Positions 30,841 to 62,712 of a stretch of 64,000 nucleotides of DNA are shown in pieces; the stretch's first letter is position 1; the number at the start of each line of letters is the position of its first letter. Origin of the DNA: Mytilus trossulus (lineage: Eukaryota). Location: positions 39,060,001 to 39,124,000 of the forward strand of contig NC_086382.1 of assembly GCF_036588685.1 (NCBI RefSeq), written 5' to 3'. The notes under the pieces are model-generated. The model saw only the letters and a program-made list of their open reading frames with translations, made no database searches and was not told where the DNA came from. Both the position numbers and the translations under genes were made by a program.

Positions 30841-32040
30841 ATGTACAAAATCAAAAGGACAAACGAATACTCAACATATACGGTAGATTCTGATACTAGT
30901 AGTGATGATGATTACATTGAAGATGAACAAAGCTTGAAAAGCTATCCTCAACCAAGACGCGCAATGTCGGTAGTGACAACTAGGTCAGCTCCTCAACAGC
31001 GTCATAACAGAATTATTAAAAGGTATGTTGCTCCTCGAAAGAAAGAACCAGCAGGAGACCGCATTATGTATCCATCAAATCGATGCGTCAGAAGTCTTAA
31101 TTTGAAAACGGAAAATGAAGCTGTTCTTTCCTCTGTTTATTTCAGAAATAACGAACACAGTAAAGTCAAGGTTATTCGATCAGAACCTATAAATAAACGG
31201 ATTAATGCAGCATGTTATTCGTCTCGAAAAAAGAAACCCGAAAAACTTACATATTTGTCACCGCCATTGCGATGTATTGCCAGGGTAAATTCGGGAAGTA
31301 AAAGTGTAACTGGATCTTCAACTGCTTACAGTGACAGCACTCATACCAAAGTGAGAACCAAACGGTGTGAAAGAGGTATTTATAGTTTTTCAAATGTATC
31401 GCAAAGACCCATCGTACCTTATAACATGATTGGACAATCGGCTGACAGCTTCGCAAAACGGATGAGGGTGAGTGAAGTTGTATCATCTTTAAAAGACCAA
31501 ACGGTTGCCAAGGTGGTCGGTAGACGCGATCATATTCTTCAAGATAAGATAGAATGCGTTTCTCGGAAGCATGTTTCTGGCTGTAAAAAACAGGGAAGCG
31601 ATTTAAACCATCAAACTCAAGAGGTAATCAAGAACAATTCTGGTGTAAATTTTATCCGACCCTATAGTGAACTTTATGAACTAAATGATCAAGTTGAGAA
31701 CGAAGGTGATTCAGCCGAAAAACCGAAATCTTTGAACAGAATAAATCAGAAAAAGTCTTTCGAAAATTACTCGTTTTCAAGTTCGAGTGAGAGTTCCAAA
31801 TCAATTAAAAATGATGGAAATACGACAGACAGCTCTTCAAATCTACATAGCGTTTTGTATAAAACCACGTCTACGAGGTCAAATCAGACCAAATGTCTTC
31901 ACGTGGACTACTCGAAAGTGTTAAAATCCAGGGAGAAAAAAGAAGAAGGACCTGATAACATTGAAGTTAAGATATATTACGATGATGATTTTGAATCTAT
32001 ATATCCTAAGCTACGTAAAACAAAGTCCAAAGTTAGTTGA
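30841..32040 (+). CDS. Ser/Arg/Lys-rich low-complexity protein, family S copy 1 (truncated before the half-GAR exon)
   Basis: 399-aa ORF; shares RIMYPS, F.RPY.E, S.QT.C..VDYSK and PDNI.VKIYYD with 50071; homology continues out of frame to ~32128 and the donor is lost. Confidence 0.7.
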   Translation: MYKIKRTNEYSTYTVDSDTSSDDDYIEDEQSLKSYPQPRRAMSVVTTRSAPQQRHNRIIKRYVAPRKKEPAGDRIMYPSNRCVRSLNLKTENEAVLSSVYFRNNEHSKVKVIRSEPINKRINAACYSSRKKKPEKLTYLSPPLRCIARVNSGSKSVTGSSTAYSDSTHTKVRTKRCERGIYSFSNVSQRPIVPYNMIGQSADSFAKRMRVSEVVSSLKDQTVAKVVGRRDHILQDKIECVSRKHVSGCKKQGSDLNHQTQEVIKNNSGVNFIRPYSELYELNDQVENEGDSAEKPKSLNRINQKKSFENYSFSSSSESSKSIKNDGNTTDSSSNLHSVLYKTTSTRSNQTKCLHVDYSKVLKSREKKEEGPDNIEVKIYYDDDFESIYPKLRKTKSKVS

Positions 32041-34275: not shown

Positions 34276-36588
34276 ATGAACATATTATGTAGTATAGTGC
34301 TGGCATTACACATCATTCACTTTTACGTTGTTCATGCAAACAACGTATCTAGTTTAGAAAAAAAGACTTTTATTAAATGACCCTGATGTTACGGCTTCGA
34401 GGCTTTCAAATGTTGAGACATCATTGCAAGATATGATTGGACTAACACAACAGCTGCAGAAACAAAATTAAAACATGCAGACAACCATAGCACACCTTGA
34501 GGCAACCGTGGTGAAGGAGACATCTAAACGTGTGGATTTACAGAAGAACCTGTCTCAACTACAAACCAGACTTGATCAGAAGACAGGTAAAGTTTCTCAA
34601 TTATTGTTGCAAGGTAGGTAACTGCATCCATCCGTATTTTATTTGTAAGTTGTTCTTGGTTTTTTTAGCTGAATTTCAAAACGTTTGGATACATTTGTTA
34701 GATTGGTTGTAAACTTTATAAAGATAAACTGATCTTTGGTCGGGGTGTTGGCTCTTTGATACATTCCCCACGTTCATTCTCAATTCCATTAAAATCAATC
34801 TGGATTAAAGTAATAAAATACTGTTTTAGCACAAAAGACAAAGGGTTGACCAATAAACCAATTCCTGACAATCCAGTTTAGAAGTAATTTTCGTAAGACG
34901 AAGCTGTAACCCGTCCAATGACACTTTCTTCAGACGTTGACAAAAAGTCCTTGATTCTTAGAATAAACAAAATTCTTACACGTTGTAGATAAAACAAATT
35001 GTTTCACCAATAACACATTATACTCTTAAACATATTTTTGTTTATTAAATCTTGTTTCCCATTCGTCCAGCTACACAATTAAGTTGATATGGTCAATGTT
35101 TGATTTTGTTTTATGGATTTCCCTTTATGAACTTGCCTTGGAGTAATTCTCTTTTTTTTTGTAACTATCAAACATATTTTCCTTAAAATAACGTATTCTT
35201 TTGAGAATTTAATTAAATGCCTAAGATTTCATAATCATATCACAAACACCAACAGATAGCTTTGAGGATAACATAAAATTTCGGACTAAAACGATAAATA
35301 AATGGACAACGAGCCTCTGAAGTATTGGGTACATGATATGTTTCGGAGGAAATCGAAAAGACATTTTGTTTCAAATGTTTCAATTCGACTTTGTATTTAA
35401 TCAGCTGAAACAAAAGTAACTGGTATGAAAACTAAATATCTTTAATTCTTAATTACATGATAAGTGTTTCAATTGGATGACCCTGTCCTGTATCTTGTAC
35501 ACTTTTGATCTATTTTTTTCTTTTGTGATTATATCAATAACAGATCCAGGATCGACGTATGTTCGTTGGGGACGTAAACAATGTGCTGGAGTACACACAG
35601 ACTTAGTTTACACAGGTATTGTATAATGTATAACGATTTGACCAAAGGATGTGTCCTTACTTTCATTCTGCTTCCATTGACGTACAGTGTAACGCTGTTA
35701 GGAAAATGATCTTACAGTTATTTATAAACAGATATAGAATGTATTGTATAAAGGTTCATGAGACGGCATTTTAACAACACAATGAAAAATGATCGTAGAT
35801 GGGTTTTGTGACATGTGATACTACTGTATTGCTTTTATATATTAAATGACGCGTTTGATATGAATATAATACGAACCGCTTTCTGCTTTCTGTAATAAGA
35901 ACGTTCAAATTTATAAACTTTTTAACAAAAAAAATAGTTGTAAATACATATATCAGTGCAGCATACATGCATTTAACTTATAAGATTTAAATACGATACG
36001 GTTGAAACAGACTAGACAGTCGAACATCTAAAATCAAATTTATCTTATATTAAGACTTTTTTACTATTACAAAATTCACGATGAAGATGTGTGATATATT
36101 TGAATCGTAATTTTAGGTTTTACAGCTGGCCAGGAACACTTCAAAGCTTCAAAATATTACGGAGGTCCTACTAATATATTGTGTCTTCCAAATAATCCTG
36201 AACTAAGCAACAGAACAGCTCCTGGGGTAGTGTTCTGGCGGGATCAGAGTATGAAGATGGAAACTTTTTTATTAAGGGTGCTCAGGATGAAGATGTTCCA
36301 TGTGCTCTGTGCAGAAGCAGAAACACTTCATCCTCTGTGATGATTCCTGGTAGGAGAACCTGTTATGATGGATGGCAAATGGAATACCGTGGAATTTTAG
36401 CATCGGGAAACTTCCTCCATAGACCTTCATCATATATATGCATCGATAGTCTGCCAGAATTTATACAAGGCGGACAAGATAATAAAAATGGCTTTGTTCT
36501 TTATGCAACAGCGACTAAATGTGGATCATTGGCATGTCCGCCATATGGCGACAACTTAGCAGTTAACTGTGTTGTTTGCTCGAAATAA
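34276..36588 (+). pseudogene. Short-chain collagen C4-like copy C (exons 34276-34613, 35544-35615, 36117-36588)
   Basis: +1 A in the A7 run (~34358-34364), TAA at 34469-34471, and a 1-nt deletion near 36227; otherwise collinear with copy B, including STYVRWGRKQC and CPPY..CVVCSK. Confidence 0.85.
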
Positions 36589-39480: not shown

Positions 39481-40199
39481 GCAACTTAAAATGGTTAAAG
39501 TATACTGGAGATTCCTTCCGAAGATTTACTTTTTATGAGTAACCTTGCCCCTTTTCCCCCTTAAGACGTTTTTTTCAAAACATTGAAAATCAAATAAAAT
39601 CGACCAGCGATTGTAGAAATAATAGTAGTAATATGTTTAAATCTCATAACTTGTTTCCTGCATCAAATTTTGAGGCCTTGATTTTAAAACATGATCTATT
39701 GTGCTGTGCTATTTAACAAACAAAAACGGAACAAGACACCCATACTACATTGAACATGACAAAATAAATTTTCAAACGTTTTACTTTAAGCATGATTATA
39801 AATATCGCTGAACATTAACAGCCTTTCAAGTATATGGATTTACTTCCCTTTCTCTGATAAACAAACGTATGTACATAATTAGTACTGTGACTTGCAGTTT
39901 AGTAGTACAAACACACTGTATAATTGTCTTGGGACTTTCTAAGTGTAAGTAATATTGATATTTTCAAAAATAACAGCAAAAGCTTTTAAACCATTAAAAT
40001 GTTACAAATATTTGATGAAAACATGACGCGGCTGGAAACATCTACATATAAAAGTATTTCTTAAAGTTAACTTTTCCAAACACTTCAATGATAGTCGTTC
40101 ATTACAGCATAGGAATGAGCAGTGATAGGGAATATTCACATTGTAACCTTATAATCTAGACAAATAATGTAAATTTACAAAGTTTGGTTACTTTCGACA

Positions 40200-40329: not shown

Positions 40330-41328
40330 GTATGTTGAGAGATGCACGTATCTTTATGTACTCTTCTGTGTTATTTTTTCAAGAGTGGAGGATCCAAAAT
40401 GCTGAAGGGTTATGTCCCAGTTACAGGTAATAAAGTCTACTATTTCCTTTTGCTAGTCTTTATATGTAACCTTTTTTCGCTAGTCGGTAAACATTCATCC
40501 ATGATCATCAACAGATATCACAACAATGATATTCACTCAACGCTATAAAACAACTACTTGCCTTCGAATAACTACACCATTTTCATAGATTCTGATATGA
40601 GGCAGTGTCATCCAAAACAGCGATAAGCGGAAATGACCAAGAAACTGCAGACATAAAAAGAGCAATATAATTTTAGAATGCAACATCTATAAGATAATAT
40701 GAATTTTTGTTTTTTAGACCAATGTATTTTTATAAGTTGGTATATAAACGCAATATGTGTATTTATTTTGACCAAGAGATTAATTAGATTTAAACTTATT
40801 GTTTGAAAACTAGTTATAATGACCTGAATACATATTAAGTTAACAACACGTATTTATTTACATCATTAAGCTCTTAAAAACCATCATTCAGTTTTGAAAC
40901 AAAACACTGTGTAATCTGATATCTATACTGTTTTAGACGAATTAAGAATTTGATGTATTGCCAAAAGTCTTGAATACAAAAGATGACTGTCTAATTAACC
41001 AATATAATTAGTTATAAGTGTGTCTATTGTGTGATATTGTGTGATGAAAATCATTTCAATGGGACAAATTAAACATACAATATAAAAACATATTTCCTTT
41101 TTAATTCCAGTAGTTATTGAAAGAGAACAAACTATCAGTCTAGAAATGTGCTTGTACATCTTGGTAGACGATTGACAGTGTTTGGCCTAGAACTGTTCTA
41201 AACAACAAAGGAATACCGAGAAGACCTACATCAAGACATCCTTTTCACTTTCTTCCAGATACAAATGTGGAACGAAAAGGATTGATAAGGAACCAATATA
41301 CATCTACAAGCTACCAGTCGCAAGCAAT

Positions 41329-42546
41329 ATGATCAAAGTCATAAGGACAACTAACTTTCCAACATATGCGGGTAATTCTCTTAGTGACGATTATAACAAT
41401 GAATATGAACGAGTTTTGTACAGCTACCCTCCACAGAGGCGCATTATAAGGATGGTGCCAATAAGGAAATTCCCCGACCGTGATGATATAATTCACAAAG
41501 GATATAATGCTTCTGCAAGGAAAGAACCCAAAAGAGAACGTATTATGTATCCTTCAAGAAGATTAGTCAGAAGGATTAATTGTGAAGCCGACAGTGAAAC
41601 TGGATCTTCTTCTTCTGATTTTGACAGAGATTATAAAGTCCAGGCCATTCGATCAAAGCCAAGAAATGAACGGGTTAAAATCCTTAATTTGCAGAGGAAA
41701 AATGAGTTTGAAAAAAAATCATATGTGTCTCCATCCTTGATCACCAAGGTAAAATCGAGAAGTGGGAGTGAAACTAAATCATCACGTGATGACAGTGATA
41801 GTATGCACACCAAAGTTCAGGAAAAACGGTTCAAACAAATAAGTGAAAGGTTTCGAAATTCATCTCCAAGAGACAGCACGCGTAAAGTCATTGGGAAACC
41901 TTCTGATAGCATAGCAAAATGGATTGAAGTGAGTGAAAAGTTGATTTCTTCAAAAGAACATAATGTTGTTAAGGTCAGCAATAGACACAATCATCATAAT
42001 AAAAAAAGGAAAGAGAGGTTTTCACGAATGGGAGTTCACAGGGGCCATCAACAAAGAAACAACGTGACCCATCAAACCAAACTGACAATCGGTAAAAATA
42101 CTGGTTTAACTTTCATCCGACCCTATAATGAAGTTTGTGGAAACAACGGAGTAATCGAGACAGAGGAAACTTCATCAGAAAATCATCAATCTTACTCGAA
42201 CTCAATTAAAAGGAACGAGACTTTAGAAAGTTATTCGTATACAAGCTTTAGTGAAAGTTCCGAATCAGAAATAAGCGAGGATAATACAACTAACAGCTCT
42301 AAAAGTCAGCAGCATGACAAAAATAAAATCAAGTTTTCAAGGTCAAATCAGACAAATTGTGTTCTTGTTGACTATTCGAAGCTTCTCAAGTATAGGGATG
42401 GCATAGTAAAACCACTTCCTAGAGATACAAAGATGAAAAACACGTTAGAGGAAACATACAACATCAAAGAAAACTTAAGAATTGATTCGGAAATGAGGAA
42501 AATAGCTGAAAGACGTAGTCAGTTAGAAGTATGGACAGAATACTAG
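41329..42546 (+). CDS. Family S copy 2 (405 aa; C-terminus frameshift-truncated relative to 50071)
   Basis: Collinear with 50071 up to RR.QLEVWT; degenerate homology continues to ~42705 (tattacgatgataatttt). Confidence 0.7.
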   Translation: MIKVIRTTNFPTYAGNSLSDDYNNEYERVLYSYPPQRRIIRMVPIRKFPDRDDIIHKGYNASARKEPKRERIMYPSRRLVRRINCEADSETGSSSSDFDRDYKVQAIRSKPRNERVKILNLQRKNEFEKKSYVSPSLITKVKSRSGSETKSSRDDSDSMHTKVQEKRFKQISERFRNSSPRDSTRKVIGKPSDSIAKWIEVSEKLISSKEHNVVKVSNRHNHHNKKRKERFSRMGVHRGHQQRNNVTHQTKLTIGKNTGLTFIRPYNEVCGNNGVIETEETSSENHQSYSNSIKRNETLESYSYTSFSESSESEISEDNTTNSSKSQQHDKNKIKFSRSNQTNCVLVDYSKLLKYRDGIVKPLPRDTKMKNTLEETYNIKENLRIDSEMRKIAERRSQLEVWTEY

Positions 42547-43479
42547 AATAGGGTTGACTATGACGAAACATTTTTTAGAATAATATAAAACAAACCATCA
42601 GTTGTGACTGCTTTGTAAACAAAGAAACGAAAGCATTTCAATAAATCACAAGCGAGACAGAGACCCCTATTATATTGTATTTTTATTACGATGATAATTT
42701 TAACTAATAAACAAATAAATGTCTGAAACAGTCATTTACATTTGATTAGCTTTTAAACAAAAGTAGTATGTTCCAATTGTCGAACAAGAAGACAAGATCC
42801 AATCGTGTTATCCTCAATTATGGCATCTTCAAATGCAACTTATCACGTGCACGTTAAGTGAACTTTCAACCCAGATTGCAAACTAACGTTTGGACATCGT
42901 TGGTCGAATACACCCAACTTTAATTGCCCATCGGTATCTGTGCAAAAATTACTTCATGTTGGCCAATGCCAAAGCCTGATGATACTCTGTTGGGGAATTG
43001 TATGCATTTATTTTCAAAACCTTTTGCCAAACATTGAACCAACGTTAAATATGTTGGTTAGATAAGATTAGTTCTCAACGGTGTGTGTTCGATAAAAAAT
43101 ATTTTAAATATTATATCTAACCATATCAAAATCATCTTATTCAAACAAAATTGAATGACACTTCTATGAAAACGTTAGTAGCATTTGAGACAAATTTGAT
43201 GTTATACTTTGCAAGTCATTCTACTGAATACTTCATAAAACTTATTTTGTAGCGTAACCAGATATACATGTCGTACTTCTATTTGTCTCTTTATTAGAAA
43301 GGCTACGTGCTACATAGATAGTTATTATAGAACAATTCACATCCAACATGAAAATAGTGTTAGTAAATAAAATAAACACCAACAAAGAAAATTGAAGGAA
43401 CCGAGAATGATAATCAAACAAACCAAGTAATGATAATAGTCATCAAATGTACAAAGCTTATAAATCATTTGATTCGCTA

Positions 43480-43605
43480 TTTTGGCGTTTCGTCTACATA
43501 AGACTCATCAGATCAAACTAATTAGAAAGCCAAACAAGTACAAAGCTGTGCCAAATACGGTTAAGGTAATATATGCCTGGGATAAGAAAATCCTTAGTAT
43601 TTCGA
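43480..43605 (-). mobile_element. Retrozyme-family fragment
   Basis: gcgtttcgtctacataagactcatcag...gccaaatacggttaaggtaat...tgcctgggataagaaaatccttag. Confidence 0.65.
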
Positions 43606-44355
43606 AAACATGAGGAACACGCCTATAGTTTTATTTGTTTATGCTTTGAGAGATACGGATTTCAAACATACTCCAAACTTAATAGGCATCTATTGTGGTA
43701 AACAGTTAATATATAAAACTGTCTCTAGCTCAACGTAACTTTGTACATTTCATTGTCTTGAATAAATTGAAATATTTGCATCAGGACTTTCATAACCAAA
43801 CAATCAAGCAAACAAGTGTAATTGCAGTAGTTAAATTATGTTTATACACACACATGTATTATACATACATAATATAGTGATATAACACAAGCACCAATAT
43901 AAATATACAAACTAATTGTAAACACCAGACATAAACAAAATAGCTTTTCAAGTGTATTGATTTACTTCCCTTACTTTTTATCAGAAACGTATACATTATT
44001 TATGTTGTAACTGGCAGTTTTATAGTACTACAGTTTTCCACATTACAATTTATGGCAGTGGTAAGTACAGGAGACTTTATATACATTTTGCAAATGGTAA
44101 AGACTTGACAGTTAAATGTAAAATTTTGAATATTACTTTACTTGAAAGCGAAAGCAATGTTTTTGACTTGAAACATATAATCGATAATTAGCAGTTTACA
44201 TGCACAAAATTATTAAAGCGAACAGTAGAAACAAAGTAATTATCCACGTTTAAATAATAATAGTCTTATAAGTGTGAATTATATGGGTATTATGTTGGGA
44301 GAATATTATTAATATTTCATTTCATGTAAGGAATATACAATACTGTAAAGTCACG

Positions 44356-44484
44356 ATGGCTGCATCGAGACACAGCTTTTCTACAGTTAAAGATAACGCA
44401 TTTCCTCCATGCAAATGTTACCAGTATTTGAGCAAGAAAAGAAGCGGCCAGTATTTTCTAATGGGAAAATTATTACATATAAAG
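44356..44484 (+). CDS. Stand-alone GAR (GAS2) domain protein, exon 1
   Basis: MAASRHSFSTVKDNAFPPCKCYQYLSKKRSGQYFLMGKLLHIK matches the GAS2 PPCKC...G.Y..G.K.L.IR half; donor AAG|GTATGT, phase 0. Confidence 0.75.
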
Positions 44485-46067
44485 GTATGTCTGTTACATA
44501 TCAAAATGAATATAAATAGTATATCGAGTATCGGCGGAATATGATCACTATAGGATACATGTCATAAGATGCAATTGGTGATCGAAATATTTGTCCTGCA
44601 TTATATAGATAACGTTTAAAATATATGTAAAGTTTATTTTAGTTTTAGTCATGATTTATTAGTTTTACATTGTACAACGTGCAATAGTCTTGACAACTCA
44701 CTATAGCATTGTAAACTCTTCCAAGGATTTGTATGTCGTAGTGTGATTATATGTTCTTGATATTGATGTCGACCTCAATAAGTTGCATACTAGATAAAGA
44801 AAACACGCGTTTTATAATCGCTACAATTATATGTATCTATTATAATATAAGAATAGATAATGAGAAAGTATGTATTATCTACCTGGTTACATAACTAGCT
44901 AACCATAATTGTAAAGTTTCAAACTTTGTTTGATTCATTTCTTTACATTTGATGTAGCAGCATATCTTAAAGTTGTATTATCAGTTGTTAATTGACCCTA
45001 GGAAATACATCTATTATATGTTTCACACTTTGTTATTCTTCCTAGTGTAGAGGGAGTGCACGTTGAGAACCCTTACAACAACTATTTGAAGGGTCCTTGG
45101 TAGCCTATTGTAAGGTCCAATGTATATCCCTATCCAATACAATTTATTTTTCCAGTGGCAGTCGTAATTCTCACGACCTTAATTCTAGACGGTCCCCATT
45201 ACAAGACTTAACTATTCTGTTACTAGTATTTGTCCTTGTAATGCACATGCAAGAAATGTTTGCCACTGGATGTTAAGCCACCAACACTAAATCAATAAAT
45301 TTTCTTTAACATCCGTATTTACATTCAAATTACAGTTTGTGTTGGTTTATCGATTTTTGCTACTAAATCTCTTGTTTTACTGTTATTGTAAATTTTAAGG
45401 TTTCACTGAAAAAAATCTTTAAACTTCAACTCACCGGGAAAGTAATTGATTTAAGTGTTTTTGTAAGGTCGCGTGATCTTCTGTAAGGACGTCTCGATTT
45501 CGATTGGAAGTAACAAAAAGTAGAATGTATACACGTATTTCTGATTTGTTTCACTTACAGTAACGTACCCCCATGTTACATTTAAAAAATATTTGCAAAT
45601 AATGTTCTCATATTCTTATTATCTTTTTATTCGAGAATATGACTATCAATGGATATTAATTCATAATTACACCTTATGCAAGACAGATAGATTTTGATTG
45701 GTTGATAGCCAGTTTATTTTTCGCACATTCTAATATTTTTTCCTCATTACAAACGAATTTGCCTGTTTTGCACAATTGCTGGTGAATTTGCCTCAAATAC
45801 CATGCTATTTGGCATTTTGGAAAGTCCTTTTTACACTTTTCGAGCATCTGTCCCCCATTTTTTTCAAATAATATGACATTACGTAAAATAGCGAGCTAGT
45901 GCGTATTCGTATGCATGTATAATTCCAGCGGTTCTATGATAGTATCATCTTACCCTCAAAAATAAACATAAACATATTAATGAATTACAGCTTTCAAGTA
46001 AGAAAAAAGATATCACCACATATACAGAGAGTTTCAATCAAAATATATCGCAGTAATTTAAAAAAAA

Positions 46068-46238
46068 ATATCTCATGTTATGAAGGGGTACTTGCGAAAA
46101 TACTAGTCTTGGGACCGAAATTTGCGAAAAATACTAGTCTTGGGATCGAAATTTGCAAAAAAAACTAGCCTTGGGACCGAAATTTTACAGTCTATTGACG
46201 GGTATTTTTCGCAAATACCCATCCATAACATGATATAT
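46068..46238. mobile_element. Small MITE with an internal 3 x ~31-bp tandem repeat
   Basis: catgttatgaaggggtacttgcgaaaata mirrored by tatttttcgcaaatacccatccataacatg; internal tgcgaaaatactagtcttgggaccgaaatt x3. Confidence 0.65.
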
Positions 46239-46540
46239 CTGTTCAAAATCGTACCCCTTCTAGTATTTGGTTTGAAACTTTTTGCTTGGCTAAGAACGTC
46301 CAACCAATAAAAACTCAGCCAATTAAATGATAATATTTGTATTGTGTGAGTATACGCAATACTGTAATAATTGTCCCATAGATTTTAAAAGTGGCGAATT
46401 ATCATTATAGAAAAACAAAGGAAATGGTATTTCTATCCATGACATCTGTTTTTAACCTCACAGTCACAGTGAGGCCTTAAACACGGAACAAAGAACTATA
46501 TATTATGAATATGCGCATGCACAATTCATTTATTTTGCAG

Positions 46541-46765
46541 GTGAATGAAAAGTCAGAAAAACATCACGTGATGGTTAAAGTTGGTGGTGGTTGGGAGACA
46601 CTGGAGGACTATATGGACCGTCATGTGCCATACAAATTCAAGATAGCAGAGTATAAACGGCCATTATATAGTAACACGTGTGAAGTTAAAGACATATATC
46701 TTGGAATTAAATCACATTATAAGTCCTGGAACCAATCAAAACAGTTTTATTATTCACTATTTTGA
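46541..46765 (+). CDS. Stand-alone GAR domain protein, exon 2 (117 aa total)
   Basis: Acceptor ttttgcAG at 46539-46540, phase 0; HVMVKVGGGWETLEDYMDRH is the GAR signature; tail DIYLGIKSHYKS. Confidence 0.85.
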   Translation: MNEKSEKHHVMVKVGGGWETLEDYMDRHVPYKFKIAEYKRPLYSNTCEVKDIYLGIKSHYKSWNQSKQFYYSLF

Positions 46766-47229
46766 AATAAATATTTTTTAGAAAATCAACAGAAAATATA
46801 TAAAAGTGTTTTTTTACCGATATGAACTAATATTTTAGTTATGAACGACGGTGAACAAGAATACCTTTTTTTTTTAAGTCTGAATAACTCAGAAGACACG
46901 ATTGAATAAAATGAGAAATGAATAAATGAACACTGCAATCAGAGTTTCGTTGCTTCACAAATGTGCTAAATAAATATTACGTAAGTGACCGAAGAAACAG
47001 TCTTAAAAATGTTATGTTGCTATTTAAATGATGTGTTGGCGGAGTAGTTTGGCCATAATTCTTGTGACAAATGTTTATCTTGCACCTCCTTACGTTTCAA
47101 TACTTTATGCATAATGGAACTGGACATAAAACTATAAATAGTATAAATGTTATTTTGATATAGATAAAGTGCAGCTGTTCTTAACTTTTTATAAAGATTT
47201 GTTTTAATAAAGAAGTACCTTAATAAATT

Positions 47230-50070: not shown

Positions 50071-51720
50071 ATGTACAAAGCAAAAAGGATACATAAATAT
50101 TCACCAGATACCGGTGATCCATATAGTGATGATAACTATTATTCAGAAGAAGAGGAAAGAGTTTACTACAAGTATCCTCAAAGAAAACGCTTGATAAGAT
50201 TTGTACCGTCGAGGATAGTTTCCGAACAGCATGATGGCAGAATTATGAAAAGGTATAGTGTGCGCCAAAACGAACCAGAAAGAGACCGCATAATGTATCC
50301 GTCATCTCATATCGTCAGGGAAACAAATTCTGAAACCGAAAGTGAAACTCGATCTTCTTCTGATTATTACAGAGATAATACAGTTTATAAAGTACATGTC
50401 ATTCAATCGAAGCAAACTGAAAAACGGAATAATAAAACACCAAATTTGAATAAAAAAGAAGAACTTGAAACATATTCGTATTCTTCTCCATCTTTCCGAT
50501 TTGTTCGCAGAGAAAATTCGGAAAGTGAAAGTGAAACCGAATCTTCTACAGATTACAGCAATCAAACTAAACAACAGATGCAAAGGTCGAAAATGGAAAC
50601 TGCGAGGTTTTCAAATTCATCCCCAAGACGTGTCGTAACTTATCACATCATTGATGATCCGTCTGACCGAAAAATAGAGCGAAATAAATCGAGTAAACTT
50701 GGTTCTTTCAATAAATCCGATAATATTGTTCGACGTAGGATAGAAACTCTACCTCGAACTCGACATCATGAAGGTGAAAAACGAAGACATAACTTGCCCT
50801 ATCAAACTAAACCTGCATTGAATAACAATGATGGTGTTACCTTTCTCCGACCCTATAGAGAAATTCGTAGACAGAATGAGATAAGTGAGAACAAGAGGAT
50901 TGTCAAAAATATACAACAACCTTTCCCTAACAGAAGAAAATCGAAAGGGTCTTTTGAAAGTTACTCGTATACAAGTTCAGATGAAAGTTCTGAATCAGAT
51001 AGTAGCGATGGATATACAACTGACAGTTCTGCAATTGAACAAAATGACAGATATAATGCTCAGTCTACGAGATCAACACAGACAGAATGTCTTCTCGTTG
51101 ATTATTCGAAAGTGGTAAAATCAAGAGAAGAGCAAAGAAAATACGAACAAGAACGACGACGACATGCACAGGAAAGGCATATTGTAAGTTTAGTTCAAAA
51201 TGAAGTTAACAAACCACGTTTAAACTCGAACATTACCGGCGATTCACGTATAACCGCTACTATCGAAAACCCAGCAAAACCACTTCCTAGCAATACAAAG
51301 GGGACAAGCACATTGGATGAGCAAGAGAAACTAAACGACATTAAGGAGAACGTTAGGATTGATTTGGAAAAGAAGGAAAAAGATGAGAGACGCAATCAAT
51401 TAGAAGTATGGACAAATCCTAAGCTCAATTCTGACAATCGGCAAACAATTTTAAATAATTATAAACAGGACCATAATGTGTATAATTTTGATGATCGTAG
51501 AAACAACTCCAAAACATTAACTGACAAGCGAGACGAAGCACCTGACAATATTGACGTAAAAATATATTACGATGAAAATTTTGAATCGATGTACCCGCAG
51601 CCACGTAAAAAAGGTTGCCAGTTAGTTTATTATATAGATTTGAGACCACCTACAGAAATAGTAGATCCGAAACCATTTGACGTATTTGAACGACGCATCG
51701 TGCCTCAACCGAAACGTAAG
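50071..51720 (+). CDS. Family S copy 3, exon 1 (618 aa with the half-GAR exon)
   Basis: 550 open codons ending at the strong donor AAG|GTAAGA (51721), phase 0; Ser/Arg/Glu-rich. Confidence 0.85.
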
Positions 51721-52116
51721 GTAAGAAATTGAAAAGAAATAATACAGATAAGATTAAAATTTAAATAGAATTTTTTTTTAATTGAATCATGAAATAACGA
51801 CTAAACCAATTTCTACAAAAAATAGTAAAAAATATATCTCATGATTTGTGCTTGTAATGTACAATACTGATGCATTGCGAGCTGCCTGCCCTTTCGGAGT
51901 ACCTGAGATGCCCCAAGTTTCCGAGTGGGTTCGTATTGCTCAGTCACTGTCTGCAATGTACCATTTTGTAGATAAAGACCAGACAATTATCAATTGAAAA
52001 TCAATTTGATCAAAAAATATTCTTAAGGCTACACACAATATGTAAGTGAGACGTTTTTGGTCCTTCGATACATTTTTAGACTTATCTGCTGTGGTAAATT
52101 CCGTACTGTTCGAATA

Positions 52117-53200: not shown

Positions 53201-53407
53201 AAAAAACATCCCGATTATGCAGTCAAGGTTGGTGGCGGATGGAATACAATGAACGACTACATGGAAAGACATGAACCGGTGAAGAGATTCGTTTACGAAA
53301 GAGAGCATTTAAAAAACTCTGATTTACCGGAATCAAAGAAAAAGTACTATGGATTCAGATCAAATTATAAGTCACCACGACATAATCAAACTTATTGTAC
53401 TACATAA
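53201..53407 (+). CDS. Family S copy 3, exon 2: C-terminal half of GAR plus GAS2-like tail
   Basis: Not in the ORF track. Acceptor tatttcAG; KKHPDYAVKVGGGWNTMNDYMERHEP...YYGFRSNYKS...TT*; AATAAA at 53407. Confidence 0.85.
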   Translation, partial: KKHPDYAVKVGGGWNTMNDYMERHEPVKRFVYEREHLKNSDLPESKKKYYGFRSNYKSPRHNQTYCTT

Positions 53408-54170: not shown

Positions 54171-55384
54171 AAACGTGTTCAGTGTTTTTTTCAATTTTTC
54201 CTTATTTTTGTGAAAGGTTGATAATGATCTTACGCTAATAATCATTATCGCGTAAGTATGAGTGAAAATAAGTCACGCATTTTTTATATTTAATTTTCTT
54301 GAAGAGCGGAGGTCCGATAAGTCTTCAGTCTCAATTATTATGATCTAGTTGTGATATGGTTGAAATTGGTTTTAACATTTAATTATTTCAAGGTTCAAAA
54401 ATAAAATATTTCACCCCTGAGATATCTAAATATGGTAGCTACCAATGATTCTGTAAAAGAAAAGTTAATATTTAGCAAGAGAAGACAACTCTTAATAGAT
54501 TCAGTTTCGAATAACTGTATTTTTCCAATCCCCTTTATTCAAAATATATTGTCATACGCGTGTGGTTTCAGGAGATCATATTTTTGATTGTCTCATCTAG
54601 TCTTGCTTGTATTAGTTCTATCAACATGGCCGAATTTCGGATATAATTGAACAACTAGACACGAAAGAATAGTTGAGAGAAAATTATGAAAGTATGTTGT
54701 CCATAGGGTTCCACATCAATTCCTCAAATTAAGTTTGACTTGTATTTCCATGGTTGTATTATAAAAGTTGTGGAAATAAATACTAGATGCTCCAGAATGA
54801 TAGAAAAATATATGAGCACATGTTACAAGATTTTCATTCCAGAAAAACATGAAATAACCAGAATTTGAAATAAAACAGATTAATAAGAATCATTAGGAAG
54901 AAGACTTACATGTGCATGAGAAAACAATACCAGTCAAATTTTCAGAAACGATAGCTTGTAGATCTAGATTTACGTATACACACATTAAAAAGCATGTTTT
55001 ATTCAATTTTTATATTGATTCATTTGAAATTTTAAATGGAAATTTTATCTGAATAGCAACTGTATACGGATGGCTAAGTTTAAATGCATAATATCCTTGT
55101 CTATCTTTAATTTGGTACATACGTTTTGTTTGTTGTGCATAACAATGCAATGTGCCAAAACAAATTATACACTTATCGTGAAGCGGTTAATAAATGTTTA
55201 AAAAACAGGTTAAAAATTAAGGACATACTTGCTGTTAGTCTGTGTGTTAATCACAAACAAGGAAGTGATAAATTTTGGGATTAATTAAAAACAAGAATAA
55301 ACAGACAACGGTGAAGTGAAAGAGAAAAGTGGAAAGTATGAACAATCGAAAAACCAGGGATATCTTGGTGTTATTTGTTGTACC

Positions 55385-56365
55385 ATGGGGAATGTGCAGG
55401 AACCATCTTCATTAAGAACTGCTGAACACTCAGATCTAAAGGAAGTAGGTCAAAACAACAACAACAATTCAGATCACAAGAATGAAGAATGTAGAGAGTC
55501 AGTGTCAAGCTCAAAAGACGAATGTCATCAAAGTAGTGTAAGTTTAAAAAAGCGTGAACAACCTACAAAAGATATTTTTCAAACATCAGAAACTATTGAA
55601 GAGCACCCTGAAAATTTAGAAAATGTATTACATGATACAGATAATGTATCAAGAAACATAAAGAAAAAGAAAAAGAAAAAAACTAAAATACGTAGCAAAG
55701 AGGAAAATAATAAAGAACATGCTAAATTTGCAGAAACACTTATCAAGCGGCTTGAAGATGTATTAGCTAAACAAAATACCAATCAAGACCGTGATTCTAA
55801 AGAGAAACAAACAGCTGATATTGATAGGACTGTAATTAAAGAAAGTACGAAAGGCTTAATATCAAAACACAACGATTCGATGAAAGAAGTTAGAAACGCT
55901 TCCAGTACAAGCACACGAAATACACATGTACATTTTAATAACGGAAAGACAACATATTCAAGAGGAAAAGATACTTACAAAGAATCGAATGCCAGAAAAG
56001 CTGATGAAAAAAGGAGAATGCTGAAATCGCCTTATATATTACATGTTAAAGACCAATCATTTCAAAATAAAGTTCAAATACATCGGCAAGTTAAACCTAT
56101 TATCACATACGAAGAATGTATTGTTTTTGGTGGACATGAAGAATTACAAAAACCAACTCATACTCAATCGAACAAATATTTTATTATAAAATACGATTCT
56201 GATCATGAAGAATATGAAGCTAGGCCACACAATGTTTCCCGATATAATCCGTTTCTTGACAACGTAAATGAAATGAAAAATGGAAAATTTTATCGAGCAA
56301 ATTCTACTAAACAATGTCATGCTATACCAAAACGAACTGGAAGGATGTTAAGGACTGCGAATTAG
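55385..56365 (+). CDS. Lys-rich low-complexity protein, family K copy 1 (truncated paralog of 59397)
   Basis: First ATG is in ACCATGG context (frame open from 55316); shares KFAE.L.KRLE, SNKYF...YDSDH, YNPF and NGKFYRANSTK with 59397, then stops. Confidence 0.7.
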   Translation: MGNVQEPSSLRTAEHSDLKEVGQNNNNNSDHKNEECRESVSSSKDECHQSSVSLKKREQPTKDIFQTSETIEEHPENLENVLHDTDNVSRNIKKKKKKKTKIRSKEENNKEHAKFAETLIKRLEDVLAKQNTNQDRDSKEKQTADIDRTVIKESTKGLISKHNDSMKEVRNASSTSTRNTHVHFNNGKTTYSRGKDTYKESNARKADEKRRMLKSPYILHVKDQSFQNKVQIHRQVKPIITYEECIVFGGHEELQKPTHTQSNKYFIIKYDSDHEEYEARPHNVSRYNPFLDNVNEMKNGKFYRANSTKQCHAIPKRTGRMLRTAN

Positions 56366-59396: not shown

Positions 59397-61970
59397 ATGT
59401 ACCATAGAAATTCTGCACTTGACGTCAAAGGATTACAAGTAATGCCAGTAGAAAAGGGAACAAATCGACATTCAAATCATAAAGCTACTATTGATTCAAT
59501 TTGGTGTGAAAATTGTAAAGATAGGGAAATCACTAATATTGGAACATATGTAATACCAAAATCAACAAACCAAAATATGACGAATAGTGAAAAGTCGGGA
59601 AATGAGGGAATATTTCTGGATAGTATTCGTTGCAGCAGTGGCAAAGTTCATGAACTATCATGCGTTGGAACTGCTGATCACTCAGGTTCAAAAGGAGAAC
59701 AAAACAAGAAAGACCAAATGGATAATTCAGAAAACAAGAGTGAAAAAAGAAGAAAACCCGTGACTACTTCAAAAGATAAACCTCGCCAACTTACTAAAAA
59801 TATTTTATCAGAAACTACAAAAAAACAATTGCAAAATTTGCAAAATATATCAAACGATACAGAAGATATGTCAGCTGAGAAAAAGAAAAAGAAAACTAAA
59901 AAACATAAAAAGGAAAGGAAAGAGTTAATTAGTGCGGAACAAAATGTGAAATTTGCTGAAATACTGAGAAAGCGACTTGAAAGCGAATTGGCTAGACGAA
60001 ATGACAATCATGTTGTTGATAATTACACAACTGTTTGTAAGGATGAAAACATCGAGGTTAAAGGCAAATTGGTAATAGATATGAAAAACGATTTATCTAA
60101 ACACAAAACATCAAAAGATGTAAAGACTGATAAAGTAACGATAACGAACACAATGAAGACATACCATAGCAGCGAACGTTATACAAATAAGGATAATGAG
60201 AGTAAGCAGATGCCTAAATCGGCAAATCAAATGCATCTTAAAGATAGAATCACACCTCGTAGTGAAACTGAGCCGAAATCCGCAAACAAAATGCATCTTA
60301 AAGATAGAAACACACCTCGTAGTGAAACTGAGCCGAAATCCGCAAACAAAATGCATCTTAAAGATAGAAACACACCTTGTAGTGAAACTGAGCCGAAAGT
60401 CGCAAACAAAATGCATGTTAAAGATAGAAACACACATCGTAGTGAAAATGAGCCTGAATCCGCAAACAAAATGCATGTTAAAGATAGAAACACACATCGT
60501 AATGAAACTGAGCCGAAATCCGCAAACAAAATGCGTGTTAAAGATAGAAACACACATCGTAGTGAAACTGAGCCGAAATCCGCAAATAAAATGCATGTTA
60601 AAGATAGAAACACACATCGTAGTGAAAATGAGCCTGAATCCGCAAACAAAATGCATGTTAAAGATAGTAACACACATCGTAGTGAAAATGAAAAGCAGTC
60701 AAAAAGTAAAGCCAAATACACTTCCGAAGAGACACTGGTCAAAGATATTTATAAACAACCAAGGAAACCAACACGTATAAAATCGAACAAATATTTTAAA
60801 TTAAGATACGATTCTGATCATGACGAAAATGAGGGTAGGCCAAGAAAATCCTCTCAATACAATCCTTTTCCTGTTAATGAAATGATAAACGGAAAATTTT
60901 ATCGAGCAAATTCTACAAAAACGTCCCATTCTACCTTAGAACAAAGACACGTGTATAGGTCAGTGTCTAATGCATCTGTTTTCTCAAGCTCAATAGAGGT
61001 AACTGAAGAGTCTCCAGCAAATTTGTATTCTTCATATCAGAATATTCTCTTTCACTCAAACACAAAAGATGAATTGTATCGGCAAATGGGAAAGAAACAC
61101 CAGTTTTCTCATGTTCATGATCGAGGCGACAAAATCGAAGGGGTTCAAAATGAACCAAAAGTAAATGCTAACAAAACTCGCTTGAGTCATACCACTAGTA
61201 AAGACAATATGACAAAAACGAACGCGAATATTAGAAACCCCACTGACAAAAATAGCAGAGATAATAATTCACGAGCGCCTAAGCCAAGATACAACGCCTG
61301 GACTATAGAATCAACAAACGAACAAGTAGCAAATGTAGATGCAAGGAACAATACATTCAGAGAAAAAGTTATCAAAGCAGCACGTCGTCCTCAAAATCGT
61401 TGCTTTTATTCAGAGGATGACGATAAAGACTTAATTTTAATAATGGTACAAGATGAAATTCAAAAACAGTACCAAAGAATAAAAGAAGTTCGTATCAAGA
61501 ATGAATTAAACCAAAACGACAGACAACAAGAACAAAACGAATCAGACAATAGAAATAAAAAGAACATGAAAAGGGATTCCAAGGACCCATTTTGGGACCG
61601 TAGTAAAAATTGTAGTGCCTATAAAGATGATACAGATGTTTATTCATTCAGCAGAGAAAGTGACGAATTGCAAAGGTTAAAAGTTGATACTGCGAAAACG
61701 GACAAAAAGGCAAAGAAGAGCAAGTTCATTAACGAGACATTAAATAGAGTTTCCAGTAAAAAGACCGAAGATTCAACAGAGGATTTGAATGATGAAAACA
61801 AAGACGTGTCTACTCCTATGGTGCATGAGTCCAAGAAAGAAGAAGACAAACTTGAGGAAAAGAAAGATATGTTACAGTCCATTGTTGATATACACGATAT
61901 TGGTGTTAATGTTGCGCCTCCACATCACGCACAACAAAAGGTGGAAAAACATTTCAGAGTACCGTCAAAG
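59397..61970 (+). CDS. Family K copy 2, exon 1 (up to 930 aa with the half-GAR exon)
   Basis: 858 open codons ending at donor AAG|GTAATT (61971), phase 0; true start codon uncertain. Confidence 0.85.
60213..60692 (+). repeat. Coding minisatellite, 8 x 60 bp (PKSANKMHVKDRNTHRSETE)
   Basis: Units start at 60213, 60273, ... 60633; near-identical. Confidence 0.95.
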
Positions 61971-62493
61971 GTAATTAAGATATAAGTACCATTTACTTCA
62001 GATGGGATATATTTTCCTTGATTTAAAAAACGAAGTTTAACATTCTTATTGAAAAATCTAAACTTATAATTCGAGTAAACGAGGTTTAACACATTCCAAT
62101 GAAGATAAACAAAAAGATAAACAATGACAGTAATCTAATTACATTTCGGTGAAAATGGCAATTCATCAAATAATAATTCCGTTGAATTTCACTTTCCTTA
62201 TCTTTTTCGTTTATTCAAATATCGTTGTGAAATAGTTGTATTAAGTATTCATGTGACATTTAAAGAATTGAAAGTCAAAATGAAAAGTCCCTAAAATCAA
62301 AATCTCACACACATCAAACGATCGGATAACAATTGTCATATTAATGACATAACACAGGCAGTTCCTTAACATGTAGAATAGTATAGTAAACCTGCTTTTA
62401 TAACTAGTCCAGGGTTTCCGCTGGCGGTCAAACATATTGACAACTTTTACATTAATAATAACCTTATACATTGTTTACATTTTCTACTTGCAG

Positions 62494-62712
62494 AAAGATT
62501 GCAACAAAGTGGTAAGGGTGGGTGGTGGATGGAGTAATATTAATGACTACTACAAAAGACATGTGCCAGTTACAAGGAGAGAATATAACAGGTCAAGCAA
62601 CTATAAAGGACGATCATACCTAAGTTTCCAGTCACATTACAAATGTCCTCCAAAACTCAAGCATCATTCAAAAGTTACTAATTCTACCAGTAGAAAAGTT
62701 ACATTAAATTAA
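62494..62712 (+). CDS. Family K copy 2, exon 2: half-GAR plus GAS2-like tail
   Basis: Acceptor ctacttgcAG; KDCNKVVRVGGGWSNINDYYKRHVP...YLSFQSHYKC; AATAAA near 62770. Confidence 0.85.
   Translation, partial: KDCNKVVRVGGGWSNINDYYKRHVPVTRREYNRSSNYKGRSYLSFQSHYKCPPKLKHHSKVTNSTSRKVTLN

What the first reader, a model, noticed from the sequence alone, without database searches (positions are those of the whole stretch)
44356..46765. Hidden 117-aa stand-alone GAR-domain microprotein
Seen: joining 44356-44484 to 46541-46765 by canonical splice sites gives an uninterrupted PPCKC...GQY..GKLLHIK|V...HVMVKVGGGWETL...RH domain with almost nothing else. Inference: a GAR-only protein could bind microtubules without actin cross-linking, or compete with GAS2/Shot. 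A ttttctacAG acceptor-like site at 44385-44386 suggests the ATG was recruited from former intron, or that an upstream exon exists.
Basis: partly seen in the sequence, partly recalled or inferred. Interest (0 to 1): 0.78.

Follow-up and report, generated by a model that had tools for sequence, protein, structure and literature searches.

The report
Mussel mini-GAS2 gene without actin-binding part
This is a real, expressed two-exon mussel gene for a 117-residue protein that keeps only the microtubule-binding end of the cytoskeletal linker GAS2, but public databases already list it, so it is an interesting shortened gene copy rather than a hidden discovery.

Summary
Exons 44356-44484 and 46541-46765 give 43 + 74 codons. 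Spliced contigs from 3 of 4 public runs (3 studies) join them at exactly the proposed GT..AG sites.

The product is identical to database protein P0001, XP_063401976.1/XP_063401977.1, "growth arrest-specific protein 2-like [Mytilus trossulus]". Mytilus galloprovincialis has a 117-aa orthologue. It is therefore annotated, not hidden.

"Stand-alone" also holds. A non-coding 5' exon (43998-44060) splices to 44331 and carries an in-frame TAG. The AG at 44385-6 is not used, but it lies where the parent gene's exon begins.

The parent is a full CH+GAR GAS2 orthologue about 69 kb upstream on the same strand. The mini gene copies only its last two exons: the GAR domain minus half of helix 1, plus the conserved GAS2 C-terminal tail.

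By alignment, all published microtubule-contact positions are kept, while two of the four zinc ligands are lost. The likely function is actin-blind microtubule binding or bundling as a dimer; this is inferred, not shown. The fold prediction was inconclusive.

Earlier first-reader notes of this scan on the same window (s1-827540, s1-826746) describe the same cluster.

The parts
43998..44060 (+). Non-coding 5' exon (minimum extent; the contig starts at 43998). Donor GT at 44061-2. In the frame of the main ATG it contains TAG at 44023-25. It also holds two small upstream ATGs, at 44002 and 44053.
   Evidence: X2 record 12 joins 43998-44059/60 to 44330/1 (GT..AG, cut +1; 1 of 4 runs, depth 4.48, 62 nt on the short side). 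for sequence and frame.
44331..44355 (+). 5' UTR part of the first coding exon. The acceptor is AG at 44329-30. The ATG context is cacgATGg (A at -3, G at +4).
44356..44484 (+). Coding exon 1, 43 codons. Residues 1-10 are new N-terminus from former intron. Residues 11-43 cover the second half of GAR helix 1, the CxC zinc ligands (C19, C21) and strands 1-3.
44377..44386 (+). Relic polypyrimidine tract and AG (ttttctacAG) of the ancestral acceptor, now inside the coding sequence. Its G is the first base of the V11 codon.
   Evidence: Homologous exon starts are cag|IQRIAFNCKC in the parent and cag|VKWLAGRCTC in the C8 gene. No contig uses it.
44485..46540 (.). Intron of 2056 nt, GT..AG, phase 0. 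It sits after the residue equivalent to GAS2 R242. The parent GAS2 gene and the C8/C17 gene have an intron at the same position; the C1 and C13 GAR genes do not.
   Evidence: 3 of 4 runs.
46541..46765 (+). Coding exon 2, 74 codons plus TGA. It covers GAR strands 4-5 with the GGGW hairpin, helix 2, the degenerate zinc loop (HVPY in place of HDPC), and a 43-residue tail with the GAS2 C-terminal motif (IYLGIKSHYKS).
46766..46874 (+). 3' UTR, minimum extent. Three contigs stop aligning inside a T10 run at 46866-75 and carry up to about 300 further nt (X1, X3) that lie beyond the stretch I laid. The 3' end is not determined.
   Evidence: records 7, 13 and 18.
39961..40053 (+). Decayed copy of coding exon 1, with an in-frame stop, a 5-codon gap and the first Cys lost. 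It is a relic of another duplication round and not part of the gene.
   Evidence: tblastn E 8e-5, 47% over 36 aa.
53201..53407 (+). Paralogous last exon (second half of GAR plus tail). It is the C-terminus of a 618-aa protein whose large exon is 50071-51729. Given as context.
   Evidence: P0024 = XP_063403594.1 joins ...PQPKRK to KKHPDYAVKVGGGW.
62494..62712 (+). Second paralogous half-GAR last exon (VVRVGGGW...SFQSHYK). The acceptor is predicted only. Given as context.
   Evidence: (PF02187 E 1.2e-4).

Best explanation
The locus is a small, expressed, protein-coding gene of the mussel Mytilus trossulus. It has three exons, the first non-coding.

Origin: it arose by partial tandem duplication of the last two exons of the neighbouring full-length GAS2 orthologue (CH domain + GAR domain + C-terminal tail). 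The copy lost all CH exons and the exon that encodes the first half of GAR helix 1. It gained its own 5' exon. It now starts translation at an ATG in what used to be the 3' end of the intron.

Product: a basic 13.9-kDa protein (pI 9.5). It consists of an N-terminally shortened GAR domain plus the tail that, in human GAS2, is needed for dimerisation.

Most likely mechanism (inferred):
1. It docks on the microtubule lattice at the tubulin intradimer groove through the GGGW hairpin and conserved basic residues.
2. It pairs through the tail.
3. As a dimer it stabilises or bundles microtubules without touching actin.
This would make it a natural counterpart of the experimental GAS2-GAR construct (residues 198-314).

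Shown here: gene structure, splicing, the ORF limits, conservation, and the parent gene. Inferred: microtubule binding, dimerisation, and any cellular role.
For: Splicing and ORF:
- The exon 1|exon 2 junction is seen in 3 of 4 runs.
- The 5' exon junction is seen in 1 of 4 runs, and the TAG at 44023-25 lies in frame with no Met after it.
- Depth is decoupled from the upstream 405-aa ORF. X5 has depth 19 on 41101-42577 and 0 on the GAR exons; X1 has 17 on the GAR exons and 0 on the ORF.

Annotation and conservation:
- An identical 117-aa RefSeq protein has two accession numbers, XP_063401976.1 and XP_063401977.1.
- There are 117-aa orthologues in M. galloprovincialis and in Logan assemblies.
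- A relative at 59-66% identity (P0007 cluster, 7 members) keeps the same C-terminus with no break.

Parent gene:
- tblastn with five GAS2-like proteins finds CH exons only at C10:39027416-39033425.
- These are followed by GAR exons e and f at 39034626-39035513. No other CH exon occurs in 124 kb.
- Intron positions are shared.

Domain:
- Pfam PF02187, E 1.6e-10.
- GAS2 GAR chains 9kbw_A and 1v5r_A, E 1.3e-8 and 1.7e-8.

Published microtubule contacts of GAS2 are K237, R242, R252, G254-256, W257, K266 and H267 (PMC12084551, section 10). They align to K38, K43, K56, G58-60, W61, R70 and H71.

The tail motif Y-L-x-x-x-S-x-Y-K-S is shared with vertebrate and invertebrate GAS2. The C-terminal region R271-K314 is required for dimerisation, bundling and nucleation in GAS2 (PMC12084551 passages).
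Against: - Two of the four zinc ligands (Cys-Cys-Asp-Cys; PMC10656233 passage) are lost: D268 aligns to V72 and C270 to Y74. Zinc is said to hold the fold together (PMC12084551 passage).
- The first half of helix 1 is missing.
- AlphaFold2 gave low confidence twice, pLDDT 47.9 and 53.1.
- Foldseek ranked GAR structures first, but at E 0.13-1.2, with none of 46 matches at E <= 0.001.
- No protein-level evidence exists. The runs are only guessed to be RNA, though spliced contigs argue for it.
- The 5' exon rests on a single contig of depth 4.5.
- Tissue, expression level and translation are unknown.
- The parent GAS2 itself has HHIPKQ in place of HDPC, and a sea-urchin GAS2-like has HIVTS. Zinc-site loss is therefore not special to this gene and may be tolerated. 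Equally, it could mean that these invertebrate GARs work differently.
Confidence: 0.6

Rival explanations
1. It is a regulator rather than an autonomous bundler. The mini protein pairs through its tail with full-length GAS2, or occupies the same tubulin groove. It would then lower actin-microtubule cross-linking as a natural dominant negative; this is the first reader's 'compete with GAS2/Shot'.
For: The tail motif is shared with the parent GAS2 (YLYFKSQYRS against YLGIKSHYKS). In human GAS2 the C-terminal region mediates dimerisation. The contact residues for the same tubulin site are conserved. The gene sits in the same cluster as its parent.
Against: The tails are only loosely alike (39% identity over 57 residues of the last exon), so heterodimerisation is not assured. 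Co-expression with the parent was not tested. A homodimer of two GAR domains would bundle microtubules rather than merely block the site (GAS2-GAR does so).
Confidence: 0.2
2. It is a transcribed but functionless leftover of a partial duplication. The ORF survives by chance or youth, and the damaged GAR domain (half a helix and two zinc ligands missing) does not fold.
For: Decayed sister copies exist (pseudo-exon 39961-40053). The AlphaFold2 models are low in confidence. Two zinc ligands are lost. The N-terminal 13 residues vary among Mytilus orthologues.
Against: The ORF is intact at the same length in 5 of the 6 cluster members. The sixth, P0002, has a different C-terminus. A relative at 59-66% identity keeps the frame and the C-terminal FYYSL over 64 codons in 7 sequences. 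Residues 14-78 are almost invariant among orthologues, and every microtubule-contact position is kept. In X1, coding differences are 3 in 222 nt against 6 in about 110 nt of 3' UTR (small numbers).
Confidence: 0.13
3. The two exons are really the C-terminal exons of a longer protein. The partner would be either the upstream 405-aa ORF (41329-42546), as in the neighbouring 618-aa paralogue, or the CH exons of the GAS2 gene.
For: The neighbouring unit does fuse a large exon to a half-GAR exon (P0024). An acceptor-like AG lies at 44385-6. This was my own first reading.
Against: The 405-aa ORF has its own stop. A low-depth contig lies over downstream AATAAA sites, and expression is decoupled. The 5' exon carries an in-frame stop. 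The relic AG is in a different phase from the parent's exon e, by my reading. RefSeq gives 117 aa under two accession numbers. No contig uses the AG at 44386.
Confidence: 0.04

Closest known systems
[quoted passage not shown]
   Same: The GAR domain is the best match in Pfam and PDB. The intron position inside the GAR is the same as in the mussel GAS2 orthologue. The C-terminal tail motif is shared. All published microtubule-contact positions are conserved.
   Different: There is no CH domain and no linker. The first half of GAR helix 1 is missing. Asp and the last Cys of the zinc site are replaced by Val and Tyr. The strand 3-4 loop is three residues longer than in vertebrate GAS2. The protein is 117 aa against 314.
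Experimental construct GAS2-GAR (human GAS2 residues 198-314; PMC12084551)
   Same: The make-up is the same: GAR plus C-terminal region, and by coincidence also 117 residues. In vitro the construct is a dimer that binds, bundles, nucleates and stabilises microtubules (passages).
   Different: This one is a natural gene product with a degenerate zinc site and a shortened helix 1. Its activity is untested.
Other CH-less GAR proteins: gastropod predicted proteins (Batillaria KAK7479170.1, 168 aa, GAR only) and Trypanosoma brucei SNAP1
   Same: A GAR-like domain without a CH domain (PMC10656233 passages). SNAP1 also lacks zinc ligands (three of four).
   Different: SNAP1 is a long coiled-coil protein that lacks four of five basic contact residues and does not bind microtubules. 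The mussel protein keeps the contact residues. The Batillaria protein is only a gene prediction and lacks the YKS tail motif.
Spectraplakin (MACF1/ACF7, Shot) GAR domains
   Same: The same domain family. MACF1 chains 5ve9_C and 5x57_A are found at E 0.026-0.03.
   Different: They are much more distant than GAS2. In this genome the C1 and C13 GAR genes, which carry an intact ...DPCR zinc loop, have their intron at a different place, after GKYR.

Membership tests
GAR / GAS2-related domain (Pfam PF02187) | Sequence match to the family profile above the curated cut-off | tested here: met
   Exon 2 alone: 36.4 bits, E 4.7e-9. Identical database protein P0001: 41.1 bits against a 21.3 cut-off, residues 19-74 = profile 12-67 of 69.
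GAR / GAS2-related domain (Pfam PF02187) | Gly-Gly-Gly-Trp hairpin and basic or His microtubule-contact residues (GAS2 K237, R242, R252, G254-6, W257, K266, H267) | tested here: met
   They align to K38, K43, K56, G58-60, W61, R70 and H71. V55, V57, G58-60, W61 and H71 are invariant in 30 aligned relatives.
GAR / GAS2-related domain (Pfam PF02187) | Tetrahedral zinc site Cys-Cys-Asp-Cys (helix 1-strand 1 loop plus C-terminal loop) | tested here: not met
   C19 and C21 are present. Asp is replaced by V72 and Cys by Y74, so 2 of 4 ligands remain. The ligand set is taken from PMC10656233 passages. Zinc binding itself cannot be tested here.
GAR / GAS2-related domain (Pfam PF02187) | Complete alpha/beta sandwich: five strands flanked by two helices | tested here: inconclusive
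   Profile positions 1-11 (start of helix 1) are unmatched. The parent encodes them on the preceding exon. The AlphaFold2 models have five strands and helix 2, but pLDDT is 47.9 and 53.1. Foldseek's top three are 9kbw_A, 1v5r and 5x57 at E 0.13-1.2.
GAS2 family proper (GAS2, GAS2L1-3, Pigs) | N-terminal calponin-homology (CH) domain that binds F-actin | tested here: not met
   There is no CH match in the 117-aa product. CH exons are found in the 124 kb examined only in the parent gene at C10:39027416-39033425. The transcript leader is closed by an in-frame stop.
GAS2 family proper (GAS2, GAS2L1-3, Pigs) | GAS2-type C-terminal region after the GAR (dimerisation region R271-K314 in human GAS2) with the YL..S.YKS motif | tested here: met
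   A 43-residue tail with IYLGIKSHYKS aligns to YLVVSAHYKTKK and YLVIKSKYKSS. This tests the sequence motif only; dimerisation is not testable with these tools.
GAS2 family proper (GAS2, GAS2L1-3, Pigs) | Descent from a GAS2 gene (shared intron positions, synteny) | tested here: met
   Both GAR-region intron positions match the parent GAS2 orthologue, which lies 69 kb upstream on the same strand. The tree could not place it because of a long branch.

The most novel reading that the evidence does not exclude
The boldest reading still open has three parts. First, mussels have turned the tail end of GAS2 into an independent, actin-blind microtubule dimeriser. Second, its GAR domain folds and grips the tubulin intradimer groove with only half of the canonical zinc site and without the first half of helix 1. 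Third, its start codon was born from intron sequence. With the half-GAR-capped long proteins next door, this would be a lineage-specific tool-kit that re-uses the GGGW hairpin as a portable microtubule anchor.
Probability: 0.3. Interest if true: 0.55.

Novelty: new member of a known kind. Interest (0 to 1): 0.35.

Why it matters
The gene offers a natural test of two questions from recent GAS2 structural work. Is GAR plus tail alone enough to organise microtubules in vivo? Is the zinc site really indispensable for the fold?

It is also a clean, datable example of gene birth by partial duplication, in which a start codon is recruited from a former intron. It is one of at least five GAS2-derived copies spread over about 115 kb of this mussel chromosome.

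It does not open a new class of system, and the gene model is already public.

Tried and rejected
1. My first reading was that the GAR exons end a longer protein that starts with the 405-aa ORF at 41329-42546. I rejected it on the contig junctions and decoupled depth, the in-frame stop and the 117-aa RefSeq model.

2. Exon 1 alone gives no Pfam hit and only a chance PDB row, E 1.7. Its GAR identity rests on the full-length database protein and on paralogues.

3. Structure: there were two AlphaFold2 runs with alignments of 30 and 46 rows. Both were low in confidence. Foldseek on the better one gave no match at E <= 0.001. I did not run the VIA-align libraries on such a model.

4. Dating the duplication by a tree (IQ-TREE, LG+G4, 32 of 46 rows of A4). 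I dropped 13 rows by name as near-duplicates or fragments. One more, window:62494-62709, survived the length filter only just, and rows under 45 residues were excluded. The mini-gene clade and the two half-GAR exons sit on long branches outside all GAS2 sequences. I read this as rate artefact and not as age.

5. DNA of the 59-66% relative (P0007): the metagenome scan gave 303 pattern matches, none confirmed. No dN/dS could therefore be computed. I did not use the second scan.

6. Representative search: 36 proteins at E <= 0.001. I fetched 26 of them and Pfam-scanned 5 of the 36 hits. P0010 (Y_Y_Y/amidase, Clostridium MAG) and P0029 (SBBP repeats) are bacterial repeat proteins without a GAS2 hit, so they are false positives.

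7. Literature: no paper describing a natural GAR-only GAS2 paralogue, or this Mytilus gene, turned up in the listings.

8. Papers:
- PMC12084551: passages and the whole of section 10.
- PMC10656233: passages.
- All others: search listing only.
- Lane 2017 and Dobyns 2018 are cited only through those passages.
Full report
WHAT IS THERE. The window is G000:C10:39060001-39124000 of a 1.30-Gb assembly. Contig C10 is 78,455,819 bases long, the same length as the contig that carries the Mytilus trossulus RefSeq protein below.

At 44356 an ATG opens 43 codons (MAASRHSFSTVKDNAFPPCKCYQYLSKKRSGQYFLMGKLLHIK), followed by gtatgt. After ttttgcag, 46541-46765 gives 74 codons and TGA. Exon 2 alone matches Pfam PF02187 (GAS2/GAR) at E 4.7e-9 and the GAS2 GAR chains 9kbw_A and 1v5r_A at E 2e-4. 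Exon 1 alone matches nothing.

A word search with exon 2 returned one protein, P0001. It is 117 aa and identical to exon 1 plus exon 2, and it is named "growth arrest-specific protein 2-like [Mytilus trossulus]" (XP_063401976.1, XP_063401977.1). Its 90% cluster holds M. galloprovincialis VDI44169.1 (117 aa), VDI44168.1 (110 aa, with a different C-terminus) and three Logan proteins. On P0001 the Pfam match covers residues 19-74 = profile 12-67 of 69, at E 1.6e-10. The PDB match to GAS2 GAR is E 1.3e-8. The gene is therefore real and already annotated.

IS IT SPLICED AND STAND-ALONE? One contig in each of X1, X2 and X3, from three studies, skips exactly 44485-46540 (GT..AG). X5 has no depth on either coding exon.

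In X2 the same contig also joins 43998-44060 to 44331 (GT at 44061-2, AG at 44329-30). That is one contig, depth 4.5, with 62 nt on the short side. Read in the frame of the ATG, this 5' exon contains TAG at 44023-25 and no Met after it. The ATG has A at -3 and G at +4.

The large ORF 1.8 kb upstream (41329-42546, 405 aa) has its own stop and AATAAA motifs downstream. It is expressed inversely to the GAR exons: X5 has depth 19 on it and 0 on the GAR exons, while X1 has 0 on it and 17 on the GAR exons. I therefore dropped my first reading that the GAR exons end a longer protein.

Three caveats apply. The runs are only guessed to be RNA. Contigs cannot show starts or levels. The 3' end is open, because three contigs stop aligning inside a T10 run at 46866-75, close to the end of the stretch I laid.

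WHERE IT CAME FROM. A whole-genome scan with PF02187 gave 17 matches, 16 over the cut-off. They fall into three groups:
- Ordinary GAR genes on C1, C13 and C8/C17.
- Seven diverged matches on C10: five within about 115 kb around this locus and two at 33.81 Mb.
- Two weak rows (C14, C9) that do not look like GAR.

I ran tblastn with five GAS2-like proteins (from snails and other invertebrates) on C10:39000001-39124000. It found a complete GAS2 orthologue at 39027416-39035513 on the same strand: four CH/linker exons, then exon e (cag|IQRIAFNCKCHQYIKKLGDGKYAIFGKVVHIR|gt) and last exon f (FLQNRHIMVRVGGGW...KYLYFKSQYRSTSSVS*). There was no CH exon anywhere else in the 124 kb.

The mini gene corresponds to exons e and f only. 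Its internal intron lies at the same codon as the parent's, after ..HIK against ..HIR. The C8/C17 gene has the same position, after ..VFVR. The C1 and C13 genes are split nine codons earlier, after GKYR.

The parent's exon d ends ...NLDAE|gt, so its intron cuts GAR helix 1 in two. The mini gene has only the second half. Its V11-K12 aligns with the first codons of exon e (I-Q) and of the C8 exon (V-K). The polypyrimidine-AG (ttttctacAG, 44377-86) lies exactly there, with its G now serving as the first base of the V11 codon.

The relic AG is one base out of phase with the parent's phase-0 exon start. By my own reading of the sequence, splicing a phase-0 exon onto it would run into a stop codon.

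Other products of the same duplication series:
- A decayed copy of exon 1 at 39961-40053.
- Two 'half-GAR' last exons at 53201-53407 and 62494-62712. The first is the C-terminus of the 618-aa RefSeq protein XP_063403594.1, whose large exon is the window ORF 50071-51729.

A maximum-likelihood tree of the GAR+tail columns put the mini-gene clade and the half-GAR exons on long branches outside all GAS2 sequences. I take this as rate acceleration. It gives no date.

WHAT THE PROTEIN KEEPS AND LOSES. The cryo-EM paper on GAS2 (PMC12084551, section 10 read in full) names the microtubule contacts. They are K237 and R242 (strand 3), R252 (strand 4), the G254-G256 hairpin, W257, and K266 and H267 (helix 2). 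The mutations R252E, W257E, G255E and K266E weaken binding.

A vertebrate GAS2 fragment, P0019, fixes the numbering. With it and the HMMER alignment to 9kbw_A, these residues align to K38, K43, K56, G58-60, W61, R70 and H71. All are conserved in kind. V55, V57, G58-60, W61 and H71 are invariant in 30 aligned relatives.

The zinc site is described as Cys-Cys-Asp-Cys (PMC10656233 passage citing Lane 2017). The mini protein keeps C19 and C21 but has V72 and Y74 for Asp and Cys. This agrees with the earlier first-reader note s1-827540.

The loss is not peculiar to this gene. The parent GAS2 has HHIPKQ, snail GAS2-like proteins have HHDPIQ, and a sea-urchin GAS2-like has KHIVTS.

After the GAR come 43 residues with IYLGIKSHYKS. 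This aligns with YLVVSAHYKTKK of vertebrate GAS2 and YLVIKSKYKSS of snail GAS2. In human GAS2 the region R271-K314 is required for dimerisation, bundling and nucleation. The construct GAS2-GAR (198-314) is a dimer that binds, bundles, nucleates and stabilises microtubules (passages).

The mussel protein is basic: pI 9.52, with 20 K+R against 10 D+E.

Fold prediction did not settle the matter. AlphaFold2 gave pLDDT 47.9 and 53.1, with five strands and helix 2 in the expected order and a tail hairpin. Foldseek ranked 9kbw_A, 1v5r and 5x57 first, but at E 0.13, 0.32 and 1.2, and none of 46 matches reached E <= 0.001.

IS IT UNDER SELECTION? Among the six cluster members, residues 14-78 are almost invariant, and changes cluster in residues 3-13 and in the tail.

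A second cluster, P0007 with seven members, comes from unnamed ENA/JGI contigs. It is 59-66% identical over residues 53-117. It keeps the frame, the HVP/HIP loop, the YKS motif and the C-terminal FYYSL. One member reads through the intron end and shows the same NEK-EKHH loop.

In X1 there are 3 coding differences in 222 nt (two synonymous, one A79T), plus TGA>TAA at the stop codon. This compares with 6 differences in about 110 nt of 3' UTR. These are small numbers. I could not get orthologous DNA for a dN/dS estimate.

MOST LIKELY FUNCTION. The function is inferred, at about 0.45 for the mechanism itself. The protein would be an actin-blind, tail-dimerised microtubule binder that stabilises or bundles microtubules. 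A close alternative is a competitor or heterodimer partner of full-length GAS2. A functionless relic is less likely, given the conservation.

HOW NEW. GAR without CH is not new in kind. Batillaria has a 168-aa GAR-only prediction next to two other GAR genes, and trypanosome SNAP1 carries a degenerate GAR. The gene model itself is public. Four literature searches found no description of a natural GAR-plus-tail mini-GAS2 or of this Mytilus gene. Supplements were closed.

VERDICT. This is a new member of a known kind, with a well-documented origin, and of moderate interest.

Noticed in passing
window 30841-32040, 41329-42546, 50071-51732: Three paralogous large single-exon ORFs (399, 405 and 553 aa; Ser/Lys/Arg-rich; no Pfam family). 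Each lies upstream of a GAR-derived exon or relic. The third is fused to a half-GAR exon in RefSeq XP_063403594.1 (618 aa). The second is expressed on its own in run X5.
   Followed up: partly
window 55316-56365 and 59397-61985: A second pair of paralogous large ORFs (349 and 862 aa). The longer one has an internal tandem repeat of about 16 aa (KSANKMHLKDRNTPRSETEP...). It ends 0.5 kb before the half-GAR exon at 62494. It is probably one gene, but this was not checked with transcripts.
   Followed up: no
window 43542-43608: A 67-nt stretch is covered at very high summed depth (hundreds to thousands) by many unrelated contigs in all four runs, with many odd joints. It is a dispersed, expressed repeat lying about 400 nt upstream of the mini gene's 5' exon.
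   Followed up: no
L003 and L004 (G000:C8:23.94 Mb and C17:1.57 Mb): The GAR exon of this GAS2-like gene is followed by many copies of a unit that again encodes ...TVLSYKHDPCRC. Copy spacings are 85 and 170 nt, so the end of the exon has been amplified as a tandem array. The C8 and C17 loci are near-identical to each other.
   Followed up: no
window 39961-40053: A decayed copy of the mini gene's coding exon 1 (stop codon, deletion, first Cys lost). No partner exon 2 was found.
   Followed up: partly
protein P0002 (M. galloprovincialis VDI44168.1, 110 aa): It has the same first 91 residues as the 117-aa orthologue and then an unrelated 19-residue C-terminus. It lies on the same contig as VDI44169.1. 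It may be an alternative last exon, a second copy or a model artefact.
   Followed up: no
proteins P0010, P0029: Bacterial repeat proteins (a Y_Y_Y/amidase protein from a Clostridium MAG, and SBBP repeats) score E 2e-9 and 1e-4 against the mini protein through 6-7 stacked weak stretches. They are false positives of the representative search.
   Followed up: yes
window 36202-36585: An open stretch of 128 codons (…GRRTCYDGWQMEYRGILASG…CGSLACPPYGDNLAVNCVVCSK), Cys-rich. The 83-aa ORF within it (36337-36585) has no Pfam family. It looks like an exon of an unrelated secreted protein.
   Followed up: no
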